DNA of 63,786 nt, the filler included, from Olpidium bornovanus S191 (Eukaryota; Fungi; Olpidiomycota), in assembly GCA_017911155.1 (NCBI GenBank). It is 28 parts of 28 records of this genome, joined end to end, with 100 filler letters (N's around TTAATTAATTAA, not from the genome) between each part and the next. Parts side by side here need not be neighbours in the genome. Positions count along the whole stretch, not along the records: positions 1 to 2,864 come from JAEFCI010010376.1; 27 more parts are not named here. One strand, written 5' to 3'. The notes under the pieces were generated by a model. The model had not been told where the DNA came from, made no database searches, and saw only the letters and a list, made by a program, of their open reading frames with translations. Positions 1-2,864 of this stretch are shown here, piece after piece; the first letter of the stretch is position 1, and every line of letters begins with the position of its first letter. Both the position numbers and the translations under genes were made by a program.

Positions 1-2864
1 ACATGGTCAATCTTCCACCGGCTTCGTTCGCCTTGTCTTCCCACATAGGCTTGATGCCGTCTTTGAAAAGCTGTCGGAAATCGTGACCAAGGGAATATTT
101 TAAAACACAGATATCACAGATAGGACGGCCGGAAGACTCAGACTGACGTGGAGGGTCGAGTTTTGATCGAGCTTGCTCGGCCTTTTCACGTTGTTTATCA
201 CTTTGCAGAAGTCGGTTACGTTGTCGAACCGACACATCTCCTGGAGGTTAGACTCATATCCGACAAATCCCTGCGACTTGTTCGGCGGCCGCGCGTCGTA
301 ATACAACGTCCTGGCATTGGCAAAAAGCAGAAAGCGCGAGGTGGGAGGAAGAGGGAACGTGGCGGCGGATTTTACAAAAAGCCAAACGGTTCAACGCTTC
401 GCCGGGGCTCCGATAAACCACTACAGTTCGCCATTTGGAAATTCGAGAGAGAAGCACGCTGCAGAGCGCAAAGGCGACACGTACCAGACGTCGGTCAACT
501 GCATCATGCGACCATCCTGCTTGTGGACGACCTTCCCGCCGTACTCGAACGACTCCTGGTTGCGGGGAGCGCTCGGTCCGCCGGGCCGGTGGTTCGCGGA
601 CTCTTGCTGATACGGCGGTAAGCTCAGTTCGCCGGGTTTTGAGCTCCGCCGGCGCTCGCAGGCCGCCCGCGGCAGGCCGTTCGACGGCGCCGTCGGGCGG
701 TTCAGGAGGGCCCCGGTATTGAACACCGCGAAAGGCCAGCTCGGAGGGAGCGGCGGCTTCGCCCCCGACGGGACCGCCGATATGGGGGCCGGGACAGGAG
801 GCGCGGCGGATGGCGATTTCCCAGATACCAGGTATGCCGAAGCACCCCTTACTTGTCCGGAGTTCGGCTTCGCCGTCCAAAACTGGCCGCCCGCAACGTC
901 ATGACGCGCAGGCAGCTCGAGCTCCACCGGCGCTGCGTGTGCGAGGCGGAAAGATCAGAACGAGCAGTTCAATAGCGGGGGCGAGGCTGCGAGCCCCGCA
1001 GTTTTTATCGCTCTTCAGATGTCTCATCCCAGCAACGGGGCAAGCGCGACGTACCGTGGTCAGCGTTGCTCACGGTCGTTTCTGGTTTCGTGCCTTTGCT
1101 CTCTTTGGATGCTTCAAGCTCTGCGGGACCCGGCATCTCGCTCGCGTTCCTTTGTCGCCAAACAGCCACCATCTCGGTTTTATTCGACGACTCCTGATCC
1201 GCAACAAGCAGGTCCGCCGGCTTGCCATTCGCAGTAAACGGTCCAGCCTCCTGTCCTGCCCGGGCTTCCTCACCGTCCGATTTATCTGCCGCAGCCAACC
1301 GCAGCCTTGAAGTACCAGGCGATTCTGAAAAGGCCAAGGGCGGCTCAGGCTCTTTCACGGTAGCAATTTTCGGCTCAGACTCCTTCGCGACAACACATTT
1401 CGGCTCAGACTCCTTCGCAACAACACATTCCGGCTCAGACTCCTTCGCAACAGCACATTCCGGCTCAGACTCCCTCGCGGAAACAATCCCTAACACTGCC
1501 TCCTTCGCGACAACAGTCACCGGCTCGGACTCCTTCGCGGCAACAATCTGTGGCTCGGACTCCTTAGCGGCAACAATATCCCGCTCGGATTCCTTTGCGG
1601 CAACAACCTCCAGCTCGGATTCCTCCGCGGCAACAATCTCTGGCTCGGGGTCCTTTGCAGCAACAATCTCGAGTTCACGCTCCTTCGCGGCAACAATAGG
1701 GGGCTCAGGATCCTTCGCGACAATAATCTCGGGCTCGGAATCCTTCGCGGCAACAATCTCGGGTTCAAGCTCCTTCGCGGCAACGACCTCGGGCTCAAGC
1801 TTCTTCGCCGCATCAATATCGGGCTCAAGCTCCTTCGCCGCAACAATCTCGGTCACAGGCTCCGCCGCAATAGTTTTCGGCTCAACCGTTTTCGAAGCGA
1901 CAATCTCCGGCTCAGGCTTCGTCGCAGCAACAGTCTCCGGCTCAGTCTCCTCCGCGGCAGCAACCTCCAACCCAGGTTCCTCTGCGGTAGCAGCCTCCAG
2001 ATCGGAAAGGGCCACCTCAGGGTCAGGCGCCATACCGGCGCCCGTCCATTGCGATGGCTCCGGCGCGGCCGCAACTTCGGACTCAGAGTTTGCCACTGCC
2101 GAGCGGGTCGCATCCGAATGATACTCGGCGGATCGTTCCTCGGATTCGGCTTCGTTCGACACGACGACCTCCGGCTCGGGCTCCTTCGCAGAGACCTTCT
2201 CCGACTTAGTCGTAGCGATCCGCTCGAATCGCTCCGGGCGAGTCTCACACTCGGGATTCTCCGTGAGAGCCGTGGCCAGCGCGGTCTCCTGGGCTTCCAG
2301 CATTCTTTGAGGGACGGTTTCCTCCGCTACTACAAGATCTGCATCCGGCGGCGCAACCCTCACGGCTCCGCTCAGCGCGGTATCATCCGTGACTAACGTC
2401 TCCGGTGCGTCTTTCCCGGCGTTCTTCTCCGTCGTTGCAATATACTCCTCGTTTGATCCACAAACGCTCTTCTCCATCAAGGCAACGGACTCCTCCGCAT
2501 TCGTTCCACCGGCTCCCTGCGACTCGACCGCTTTGCGCTCGGCCGCCTTCGGCTCCGCGGCAAAAACCGTTCGTTCTATCTTTGATTTCGCCTTGGCCCT
2601 GGGCGATCTGCGTCCCGGAAAAACGGACGCCTGAGACCGGAGCTCGGCATCGTCCAATGGCGATTTGGGTGTTGAGCTTGTCTGGATCGTCTCAGTCATC
2701 GTTGGCGCCAATTCTCCAATGGCGGTCAATGCGTTGTCGGTGACATGCACAATATCCGCAGTAGGGGAGCTAACCGGCGGAAAGCTGTGTTCGGACGCCA
2801 CCTCCGTTGGTTTCGCTGGAGTTTGGTCGACACGGATGTCCTGTTCTTGTTGTACGCTCACAGC
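1..2864 (-). CDS. Atypical eIF4E-family cap-binding protein with very long acidic, repeat-containing N-terminus (open at both contig ends)
   Basis: Four exons join in frame via GT-AG introns: 2864-1055, 932-485, 310-148, 70-1 (introns 1054-933, 484-311, 147-71). The spliced C-terminus reads MQLTDVW-TLYYDARPPNKSQGFVGYESNLQEMCRFDNVTDFCKVINNVKRPSKLDQNSTLH-LFKDGIKPMWEDKANEAGGRLTM, matching the eIF4E core including FKxGIKPxWED. Confidence 0.85.
1345..1990 (-). repeat. Coding minisatellite: about 21 degenerate 30-bp units encoding 10-aa EPEIVAAKES-like repeats
   Basis: Plus strand shows recurring GGCTCRGACTCCTTCGCGGCAACAATCTC; translation of ORF 1005..2861 shows the 10-aa periodicity. Confidence 0.95.

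What the first reader, a model, noticed from the sequence alone, without database searches (positions are those of the whole stretch)
1..500. Non-canonical eIF4E core: Trp73-equivalent is Cys, Trp56- and Trp46-equivalents are Tyr
Seen: after splicing, the core reads DVW-TLYYD...VGYESNL...FDNVTDFCKV...FKDGIKPMWED. Established: in human eIF4E numbering W56 and W102 stack the m7G cap, and W73 is the dorsal residue that binds eIF4G and 4E-BPs; keeping W43 with W56 changed to Tyr/Cys is the Class III signature, described mainly in animals. Here W43, W102 and E103 are kept, W46 and W56 are Tyr, and W73 is Cys. Inference: a paralog that may still bind the cap but not eIF4G, acting as a translational repressor or mRNA-tethering factor in an early-diverging fungus.
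Basis: partly seen in the sequence, partly recalled or inferred. Interest (0 to 1): 0.78.

Follow-up and report, generated by a model that had tools for sequence, protein, structure and literature searches.

The report
Fungal accessory eIF4E lacking dorsal Trp
The window holds the first half of an expressed, spliced cap-binding-protein (eIF4E) gene whose odd residues (Tyr, Tyr and Cys where Trp is usual) are real, but they are the standard signature of a widespread accessory eIF4E class of fungi that was catalogued in 2024, so this is a new member and not a new kind.

Summary
On the minus strand, three exons (932-485, 310-148, 70-1) encode the N-terminal half of an eIF4E core. Trp43, Trp102, Glu103 and Arg112 are kept. 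Trp46 and Trp56 are Tyr, and Trp73 is Cys (TGC, 207-205). Assembled contigs from two studies show all three GT..AG splice joints and no variant at the Cys codon. They also show that the upstream 600-codon ORF is spliced in frame onto the eIF4E exons. The product therefore has an acidic N-terminal extension of at least 750 aa, with 21 decapeptide repeats.

The signature is not unique. In 120 fungal relatives (Glomeromycotina, Mortierellomycotina, Basidiomycota), Trp56 is Tyr in 120 of 120 and Trp73 is Cys in 116 and Ala in 4. Four of these relatives are listed as "F-Class VI" in Hernández et al. 2024 (PMC11791286). That class has long extensions, and its tested member did not rescue yeast cdc33. 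It is not metazoan Class III.

The closest relative is an Olpidium bornovanus protein with the same residues and the same intron positions. These two proteins also lack His37-Pro38, Trp113 and a clade-specific Trp. Likely function is cap binding without canonical eIF4G/4E-BP docking. That function is inferred, not shown.

Verdict: new member of a known kind; modest interest.

The parts
1055..2864 (-). Large 5' coding exon encoding the N-terminal extension. It runs off the piece edge at 2864, so the start codon is not in the window.
   Evidence: Open frame of 603 codons. It is joined in frame to the next exon by the joint 932>1055 seen in the contigs of X1 and X2. The product is acidic (net charge -57 over the 750 aa before the core) and rich in A, E, P, V and S. 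No relatives were found.
1341..1968 (-). Array of 21 tandem 30-bp units that encode decapeptide repeats (consensus about EIVAAKESEP) inside the extension.
   Evidence: Tandem Repeats Finder: period 30, 21.0 copies, 75% matches.
933..1054 (-). Intron of 122 nt (GTACGT..CGCAG). It contains the stop codon (1007-1005) that seemed to end the upstream ORF.
   Evidence: Joint 932>1055 with CT..AC ends in X1 and X2. The frame stays open across it.
485..932 (-). Exon encoding a Pro/Ala/Ser-rich linker and the first strand of the eIF4E core (..FEYGGKVVHKQDGRMMQLTDV plus the first two bases of the Trp43 codon). It has no ATG before MMQL.
   Evidence: The segment before the core is conserved with Olpidium P0001 (ETFDYDGRTYTKEDARHLPLNDVW).
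311..484 (-). Intron of 174 nt (GTACGT..GCCAG), phase 2, inside the Trp43 codon.
   Evidence: Joint 309/310>484/485 in X1 and X2. The Olpidium locus L001 has an intron at the same place and phase.
148..310 (-). Exon with the third base of Trp43, Tyr46 (303-301), Tyr56 (258-256), Val69 and Cys73 (207-205).
   Evidence: Pfam IF4E 36.6 bits. Gap-free alignment to 4EHP. No variant letters in the contigs of two studies.
71..147 (-). Intron of 77 nt (GTCAGT..GACAG), phase 0, after ..STLH.
   Evidence: Joint 70>148 in X1 and X2. One X1 contig (61-190) retains it. The Olpidium gene model reads through an intron at the same position.
1..70 (-). Exon encoding LFKDGIKPMWEDKANEAGGRLTM: Trp102 (43-41), Glu103 (40-38), Arg112 (13-11) and Leu in place of Trp113. 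It is cut by the piece edge.
   Evidence: Pfam IF4E 34.0 bits. The X2 contig continues 399 nt beyond position 1.

Best explanation
This is the 5' part of an expressed, intron-containing gene for an accessory eIF4E-family protein. It belongs to, or sits next to, the fungal-specific class that Hernández et al. 2024 call F-Class VI. An N-terminal extension of at least 750 aa (acidic, probably disordered, with 21 decapeptide repeats) is followed by an eIF4E core. In the visible half of the core the cap-stacking pair is Tyr56/Trp102, as in 4EHP, and Glu103 and Arg112 are kept. The dorsal Trp73 that clamps the YxxxxL-phi helix of eIF4G and 4E-BPs is Cys, and His37-Pro38 are Met-Gln. Shown here: the exon structure, expression, the residues, and their conservation across the clade. 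Inferred: the protein binds capped mRNA, probably more weakly than eIF4E-1. It cannot recruit eIF4G through the canonical dorsal site, so it is not the general initiation factor. It more likely sequesters or tethers particular capped mRNAs, with partners engaged through a remodelled dorsal face or through the long extension.
For: Identity and structure:
- Pfam IF4E scores above its cut-off on two exons.
- Exon 2 aligns without gaps to 4EHP.
- Three GT..AG joints appear in contigs of two studies, with the intron bin 385-480 at zero depth.
- The spliced frame is open for 830 codons.

Class:
- The window core matches 121 fungal proteins at 39-53% identity, E 1e-16 to 1e-36. It scores 84 bits on an HMM built from 120 of them.
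- In those 120, position 56 is Tyr in 120, position 73 is Cys in 116 and Ala in 4, and position 46 is Tyr in 102 and Phe in 16. Trp102, Glu103, Arg157, Arg162 and Trp166 are invariant or nearly so.
- Four of them (XP_008045524.1, XP_041173363.1, XP_009551965.1, XP_007363322.1) are labelled F-Class VI in Table S1 of PMC11791286. Each of those species also has a Class I and a Class II gene.
- That paper gives N-terminal extensions of 100-900 aa for the class, and reports no rescue of cdc33 by the F-VI and F-VII representatives.
- Its Fig. S15 and S20 alignments show non-Trp residues at position 73 (Cys in Puccinia, Rhodotorula and Rhizophagus).

Nearest relative:
- Olpidium bornovanus KAG5456899.1 is 63% identical over exon 2 and has the same Trp43, Tyr46, Tyr56 and Cys73, with GGK-L at positions 112-113.
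- Both intron positions are conserved, and the two proteins are sister with 100/100 support.

Role of Trp73 in eIF4G and 4E-BP binding: Joshi 2005, PMC1260017.
Against: - The C-terminal half of the core (Arg157, Lys162, Trp166) lies beyond the piece edge, so the cap pocket is only half seen.
- The tree has no Class I or Class II outgroup, and the window-plus-Olpidium branch is very long (2.5 changes per column). Orthology with F-Class VI, as opposed to a separate class, is therefore not proven.
- The window and Olpidium lack three features that are invariant or nearly so in the 120 relatives: His37-Pro38 (Olpidium keeps Pro38), the Trp of the FNW motif, and Trp113.
- No functional data exist for this protein. 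The published cdc33 test did not verify expression.
- Runs X1 and X2 are only guessed to be RNA or DNA by their records. I read them as RNA because they carry spliced forms.
- Two raw RNA-seq runs with the same species label laid no reads at all, which is no test either way.
- I could not check that the same genome has canonical Class I and Class II genes.
Confidence: 0.8

Rival explanations
1. The window and Olpidium proteins form a separate, undescribed eIF4E class of early-diverging fungi. On this view the class resembles F-Class VI only at positions 46, 56 and 73 and is not orthologous to it.
For: The pair sits on a very long branch, with 100/100 support separating it from the other 25 rows. 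Both proteins lack the FNW Trp and Trp113, which are invariant in 120 of 120 relatives, and His37, which is present in 116 of 120. The window also lacks Pro38, which is present in 118 of 120. GGR-LT resembles another long-extension group (Lobosporangium, Radiomyces: GGRLTL) shown in Fig. S20 of PMC11791286. The exhaustive search with exon 2 found only Olpidium at E<1e-3.
Against: From Tyr56 to Arg112 the window is about 60% identical to P0006 (the Cys73 type) and about 40% identical to the Lobosporangium and Rhizophagus GGRLT/GGRFT type. That count was made by hand. The motif run F-C-x-x-x-N-x-V-K-R-P-S-x-L-D-x-N-S is shared with the Cys73 clade. The topology of the remaining rows roughly follows the species tree, which fits an early-diverging orthologue that evolves fast. 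The single hit reflects a 54-aa query against 1.8 billion proteins, not rarity.
Confidence: 0.15
2. It is a fungal orthologue of metazoan Class III eIF4E (eIF4E-3), as the Trp43 with non-Trp56 signature suggested to the first reader.
For: Trp43 is kept and position 56 is Tyr, which meets the two-residue rule of Joshi 2005.
Against: The same two-residue pattern is that of fungal Class II (Joshi 2005, and Fig. S19). All Class III members keep Trp73. No fungal Class III orthologues were found in 538 species according to the text of PMC11791286. eIF4E-3 is not among the PDB hits of exon 2 at E<=1. For the clade proxy P0006, eIF4E-3 scores 51.7 bits against 123.8 bits for 4EHP.
Confidence: 0.02
3. 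It is a decaying or non-functional copy (a pseudogene), or the Cys is a strain-specific or assembly error.
For: Several Trp residues that are normally conserved are replaced. The core is fused to low-complexity repeats.
Against: The spliced frame is open for 830 codons. The gene is expressed and correctly spliced in runs of two studies, with no variant at 205-207. Intron positions and the variant residues are conserved with Olpidium, and the variant residues across 120 relatives.
Confidence: 0.03
4. It still works as an initiation factor, binding eIF4G or another scaffold through a remodelled dorsal surface in which another Trp replaces Trp73.
For: In the 120 relatives, Cys73 goes with a Trp at the Glu132 position (116 cases) and Ala73 goes with Glu132 (4 cases). 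A Trp five residues after position 73 is invariant. This points to a conserved, re-engineered surface and not to plain loss.
Against: The window has Asn at the +5 position. Olpidium has Asn at both the +5 and 132 positions, so this lineage lacks the putative substitute Trp residues. The class representative did not rescue cdc33. The species checked keep a separate Class I gene.
Confidence: 0.1

Closest known systems
Fungal F-Class VI eIF4E (Hernández et al. 2024, J Biol Chem, PMC11791286), for example Trametes versicolor XP_008045524.1 and Puccinia striiformis XP_047805662.1
   Same: Trp43 is kept. Position 46 is Tyr or Phe, position 56 is Tyr, and position 73 is not Trp (Cys in most). Trp102, Glu103 and Arg/Lys112 are kept. 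The N-terminal extension is long (100-900 aa reported). It is an accessory paralogue that sits beside Class I and Class II genes.
   Different: The window (and Olpidium, except that it keeps Pro38) lacks His37-Pro38, the Trp of the F-C-x-x-F-N-W motif, and Trp113. The extension is built of acidic decapeptide repeats with no relatives. The lineage looks earlier-diverging than the phyla in that survey. The paper's class labels are inconsistent between its text and Table S1, and it does not discuss position 73.
Olpidium bornovanus KAG5456899.1 (partial protein from a MAG, annotated as an eIF4E-like domain protein)
   Same: Same Trp43, Tyr46, Tyr56 and Cys73. Same Leu at position 113 and Asn at the FNW position. 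Both intron positions are the same. The roughly 24-aa segment before the core is conserved. It also has a long low-complexity N-terminal region.
   Different: Identity is only 63% over exon 2. Its N-terminal region is Ala/Pro/Gly-rich and has no decapeptide repeats. Its gene model reads through an intron and the contig ends inside the core.
4EHP / eIF4E2 (Class II; PDB 2jgb, 5nvk)
   Same: Tyr at the Trp56 stacking position. The Trp46-Trp56 loop has the same length, so exon 2 aligns without gaps. It is the best PDB match of the clade (123.8 bits). It works as a cap-binding repressor that does not bind eIF4G.
   Different: 4EHP keeps the dorsal Trp (Trp95) and uses it to bind 4E-T, GIGYF and 4E-BP motifs. 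It has Tyr at position 43. It has no long extension. Identity to exon 2 is about 28%.
Long-extension eIF4E-like proteins of Mucoromycota and some Basidiomycota (Lobosporangium XP_021884632.1, Rhizophagus XP_025167616.1, Cryptococcus wingfieldii XP_019032290.1)
   Same: N-terminal extension of 350-900 aa, Tyr56, no Trp at 73, and GGR-L/F/I in place of GGRW.
   Different: Identity is lower, about 40% from Tyr56 to Arg112 by hand count. There is a 3-aa insertion in helix 1 and a different helix-1 motif.

Membership tests
eIF4E family (Pfam PF01652 IF4E) | Match to the family HMM above the gathering score | tested here: met
   Exon 2 scores 36.6 bits and exon 3 scores 34.0 bits against a cut-off of 28.7, on contiguous profile positions 7-56 and 57-79.
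eIF4E family (Pfam PF01652 IF4E) | Aromatic residue at position 56, plus Trp102 and Glu103 for cap stacking and guanine recognition | tested here: met
   Tyr at 258-256, Trp at 43-41 and Glu at 40-38.
eIF4E family (Pfam PF01652 IF4E) | Arg157, Lys/Arg162 and Trp166 (phosphate and methyl contacts) | not testable with these tools
   These positions lie beyond window position 1. They are conserved in 119-120 of 120 relatives. Arg157 is visible in the Olpidium DNA after the end of the gene model.
Class III eIF4E (Joshi 2005; M-Class III) | Trp at 43 and Cys or Tyr at 56 | tested here: met
   Trp43 and Tyr56. Fungal Class II shows the same pattern.
Class III eIF4E (Joshi 2005; M-Class III) | Trp73 kept, and grouping with metazoan eIF4E-3 | tested here: not met
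   Position 73 is Cys. eIF4E-3 is absent from the PDB hits of exon 2. The clade proxy scores 51.7 bits against eIF4E-3 and 123.8 bits against 4EHP.
Class II eIF4E (4EHP/nCBP, including fungal Class II) | Tyr or Phe at position 56 | tested here: met
   Tyr56.
Class II eIF4E (4EHP/nCBP, including fungal Class II) | Dorsal Trp73 kept (FW motif), and Lys/Arg162 changed to Ile, Val or Leu (definition of Hernández 2024) | tested here: not met
   Position 73 is Cys. Mucoromycota Class II proteins read F-W-A-V-Y-S-H-L there. Position 162 is not visible in the window but is Arg in 120 of 120 relatives.
F-Class VI eIF4E (Hernández et al. 2024) | Trp, Tyr or Phe at position 56, with Arg/Lys112 kept | tested here: met
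   Tyr56 and Arg112.
F-Class VI eIF4E (Hernández et al. 2024) | N-terminal extension of 100-900 aa | tested here: met
   At least 750 aa lie before the core. The extension is joined to the core by a splice seen in the contigs of two studies.
F-Class VI eIF4E (Hernández et al. 2024) | Internal insertion of 18-25 aa and a C-terminal extension | not testable with these tools
   These regions lie beyond the piece edge. Olpidium has an insertion of roughly 20-25 aa after GGK-LTI.
F-Class VI eIF4E (Hernández et al. 2024) | Phylogenetic grouping with recognised members | tested here: inconclusive
   Identity to 121 relatives is 39-53%, and four of those checked are listed as F-Class VI. The clade HMM gives 84 bits. 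The tree has no outgroup and the branch is long.

The most novel reading that the evidence does not exclude
The window organism and Olpidium carry a distinct, fast-evolving eIF4E lineage. It has lost the dorsal Trp73, and also His37 (with Pro38 as well in the window), Trp113 and the clade's substitute Trp residues, and it is fused to a very long acidic repeat domain. Such a protein would be a cap-binding module that cannot use any known 4E-binding-motif interface and that tethers capped mRNAs through its extension. More broadly, loss of Trp73 would be ancient and pan-fungal, with a covarying Trp at position 132 marking a re-engineered partner surface that nobody has characterised.
Probability: 0.25. 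Interest if true: 0.55.

Novelty: new member of a known kind. Interest (0 to 1): 0.3.

Why it matters
Fungi commonly carry a third eIF4E beside the canonical Class I and the 4EHP-like Class II. In that third protein, the residue that couples cap binding to eIF4G and 4E-BPs is systematically replaced. The class has been catalogued, but its partners and targets are unknown, and the published survey does not comment on the loss of Trp73. This window adds an expressed member from a lineage near Olpidium. That pushes the loss of Trp73 back towards the base of the terrestrial fungi, if orthology holds. The member also has an unusually long acidic repeat extension. It is a reasonable candidate for biochemical work on eIF4G-independent cap-binding proteins, but it does not open a new category.

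Tried and rejected
- Two raw RNA-seq runs with the same species label (X21, X24) laid no reads on the window. Strandedness, transcript ends and expression level could not be read. Support for splicing comes from assembled contigs only.
- The exhaustive protein search with the 54-aa exon 2 gave one true relative and four spurious repeat proteins. This reflects the short query and is not evidence of rarity.
- The word search with the Olpidium core found only itself and P0006.
- The word search with the 603-aa N-terminal exon scored 8000 candidates and none passed. The window's own full protein was therefore not retrieved, and the C-terminal half of the core stays unknown.
- The metagenome scans by protein and by an exact 24-mer of exon 3 found nothing.
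- No YxxxxL-phi motif occurs in the 830 aa, so a self-binding 4E-binding motif was rejected.
- Pfam finds nothing credible in the extension.
- I did not predict a structure. Only half the domain is in the window, and the tool returns no coordinates for measuring dorsal-surface contacts.
- I did not type sequences from the paper's figures into tools. The comparison with the GGRLT group is therefore a hand count.
- The organism is coded in the run table and I could not name it.
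Full report
**What is in the window**

The feature is on the minus strand. Six-frame reading and splice-site inspection give four coding exons:
- 2864-1055
- 932-485
- 310-148
- 70-1

They are separated by GT..AG introns of 122, 174 and 77 nt. The joined frame is open for 830 codons and runs off both ends of the piece.

The last three exons encode the N-terminal half of an eIF4E core. Pfam IF4E matches exon 310-148 (36.6 bits, profile 7-56) and exon 70-1 (34.0 bits, profile 57-79). 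Both scores exceed the 28.7-bit cut-off, and the two matches are contiguous in the profile.

**Check of the residues**

phmmer against PDB aligns exon 310-148 without a gap to human 4EHP. This fixes the register:
- Tyr of VGYESN corresponds to 4EHP Tyr78, which is eIF4E-1 Trp56.
- Cys of DFCKV corresponds to 4EHP Trp95, which is Trp73.
- The first Tyr of TLYYD corresponds to Trp46.

Trp43 is assembled across the first small intron (TG|G). Trp102, Glu103 and Arg112 are in the last exon, and Trp113 is Leu. The Cys codon is TGC at 207-205.

**Expression and splicing**

Laying public runs on the window showed all three joints in the contigs of X1 and X2, which belong to different studies:
- 70>148
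- 309/310>484/485
- 932>1055

All have CT..AC ends on the + strand. Depth is zero in the bin 385-480, inside the 174-nt intron, and there is no variant letter over 148-309. One X2 contig of 1167 nt spans all four exons and continues 399 nt past position 1.

So the TGC is real and the exons are real. The apparently separate upstream ORF (1005-2861) is in fact the 5' exon of the same mRNA, and its stop codon lies in the 122-nt intron. Two raw RNA-seq runs with the same species label gave no reads, which tests nothing.

**The N-terminal extension**

About 750 residues precede the core. The region is acidic (net charge -57) and rich in Ala, Glu, Pro, Val and Ser. It contains 21 tandem decapeptides of the type EIVAAKESEP, encoded by a 30-bp array at 1341-1968. 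It has no YxxxxL-phi motif, no credible Pfam domain and no detectable relatives.

**Relatives**

An exhaustive search with exon 2 found one true relative, P0001. This is KAG5456899.1 from an Olpidium bornovanus MAG.
- It has the same Trp43, Tyr46, Tyr56 and Cys73, and it reads GGK-L at positions 112-113.
- Its locus has an intron at the same place and phase inside the Trp43 codon.
- It has a second intron, read through by the gene model, at the same place after STLH.

A second relative, P0006, opened up a large family: 530 fungal proteins at E<=0.001.

I aligned the best 120 with the window core. The counts at each position are:

| Position (human eIF4E-1) | Residue in the 120 relatives |
|---|---|
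| 43 | Trp 118 |
| 46 | Tyr 102, Phe 16 |
| 56 | Tyr 120 |
| 69 | Val 120 |
| 73 | Cys 116, Ala 4 |
| 102, 103 | Trp, Glu 120 |
| 112 | Lys 115, Arg 5 |
| 157 | Arg 119 |
| 162, 166 | Arg, Trp 120 |

The window core is 39-53% identical to these proteins and scores 84 bits on their HMM.

**Published classification**

Hernández et al. 2024 (PMC11791286) sorted 1462 fungal eIF4Es into Class I, Class II and the fungal classes IV-VII. They found no fungal Class III.

F-Class VI is described as having:
- Trp, Tyr or Phe at position 56
- internal insertions
- N-terminal extensions of 100-900 aa

The F-VI and F-VII representatives did not rescue yeast cdc33, although expression was not verified.

Four of my 120 relatives are listed as F-Class VI in the paper's Table S1. 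They come from Trametes, Suillus, Heterobasidion and Dichomitus. Each of those species also has one Class I and one Class II gene.

The paper's Fig. S15 and S20 alignments show non-Trp residues at position 73 throughout these classes, including Cys in Puccinia, Rhodotorula and Rhizophagus. The text mentions W73 only once, in the introduction. Class labels differ between the text and Table S1, so I use "F-Class VI" for the Cys73 clade as Table S1 does for Basidiomycota.

Joshi et al. 2005 (PMC1260017) already noted two relevant points. Fungal Class II members carry Trp43 with Tyr56. Replacing Trp73 with a non-aromatic residue abolishes eIF4G and 4E-BP binding.

**Where the window protein differs**

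The window and Olpidium proteins are sister with 100/100 support, on a long branch apart from the other 25 rows. That tree has no outgroup.

They lack features that are invariant or nearly so in the 120 relatives:
- His37-Pro38 is Met-Gln in the window and Leu-Pro in Olpidium.
- The Trp five residues after position 73 (the FNW motif) is Asn in both.
- Trp113 is Leu in both.

In the 120, Cys73 goes with Trp at the Glu132 position (116 cases) and Ala73 goes with Glu132 (4 cases). This hints at a remodelled dorsal surface. Olpidium has Asn at that position, and the window does not reach it.

By hand count from Tyr56 to Arg112, the window is about 60% identical to P0006. It is about 40% identical to the GGRLT/GGRFT long-extension proteins of Lobosporangium and Rhizophagus. 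I therefore place it nearest the Cys73 clade.

**How it most likely works**

Shown:
- The gene is expressed and spliced.
- The visible half of the core has the 4EHP-like Tyr/Trp stacking pair with Glu103 and Arg112.
- The dorsal Trp73 is Cys.
- The core is fused to a long acidic repeat region.

Inferred:
- The protein binds the cap.
- It cannot dock the canonical 4E-binding helix of eIF4G or 4E-BPs.
- It acts as an accessory factor, either sequestering capped mRNAs or bringing them to partners bound by the extension or by a remodelled surface.

The published failure of the class to rescue cdc33 agrees with this reading but is weak evidence.

**Verdict**

This is a new member of a known, catalogued fungal eIF4E class, and possibly a divergent early branch of it. 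Interest is modest.

Noticed in passing
window 1341-1968: A 30-bp tandem array of 21 copies (75% matches) encodes acidic decapeptide repeats of the type EIVAAKESEP. The antisense frame also stays open there (ORF 1222-2121 on the + strand), which is a by-product of the repeat.
   Followed up: partly
alignment of 120 fungal relatives (P0006-P0125): Position 73 covaries with position 132. Cys73 goes with Trp132 in 116 proteins. Ala73 goes with Glu132 in 4, which appear to be the Mortierellaceae sequences. A Trp five residues after position 73 is invariant. Together these suggest a relocated dorsal Trp.
   Followed up: partly
L001 (Olpidium bornovanus JAEFCI010010976.1) 216-1874: The deposited gene model KAG5456899.1 reads through an intron after STLH, which adds about 25 spurious residues. 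The contig ends inside the core. The DNA after the model's last residue continues in frame with RRPRGD, the Arg157 region.
   Followed up: partly
window 61-190: One X1 contig keeps the 77-nt intron and carries G>A at position 110, inside the intron. It could be an unspliced transcript, a second allele or DNA carry-over.
   Followed up: no
PMC11791286, text versus Table S1: Class labels are inconsistent. The text defines F-Class VII by Arg/Lys112 to Ser/Ala, but Table S1 labels those Mucoromycota proteins F-Class VI and labels the long-extension GGRLT proteins F-Class VII. One Rhizophagus protein is listed as M-Class III although the text says that fungi have none.
   Followed up: partly
window 485-560 and P0001 residues 305-330: A segment of about 24 aa just before the core is conserved between the window and Olpidium (E-S/T-F-E/D-Y-x-G ... 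K-x-D-x-R ... L-x-D-V-W). It is not obvious in the other 120 relatives.
   Followed up: no
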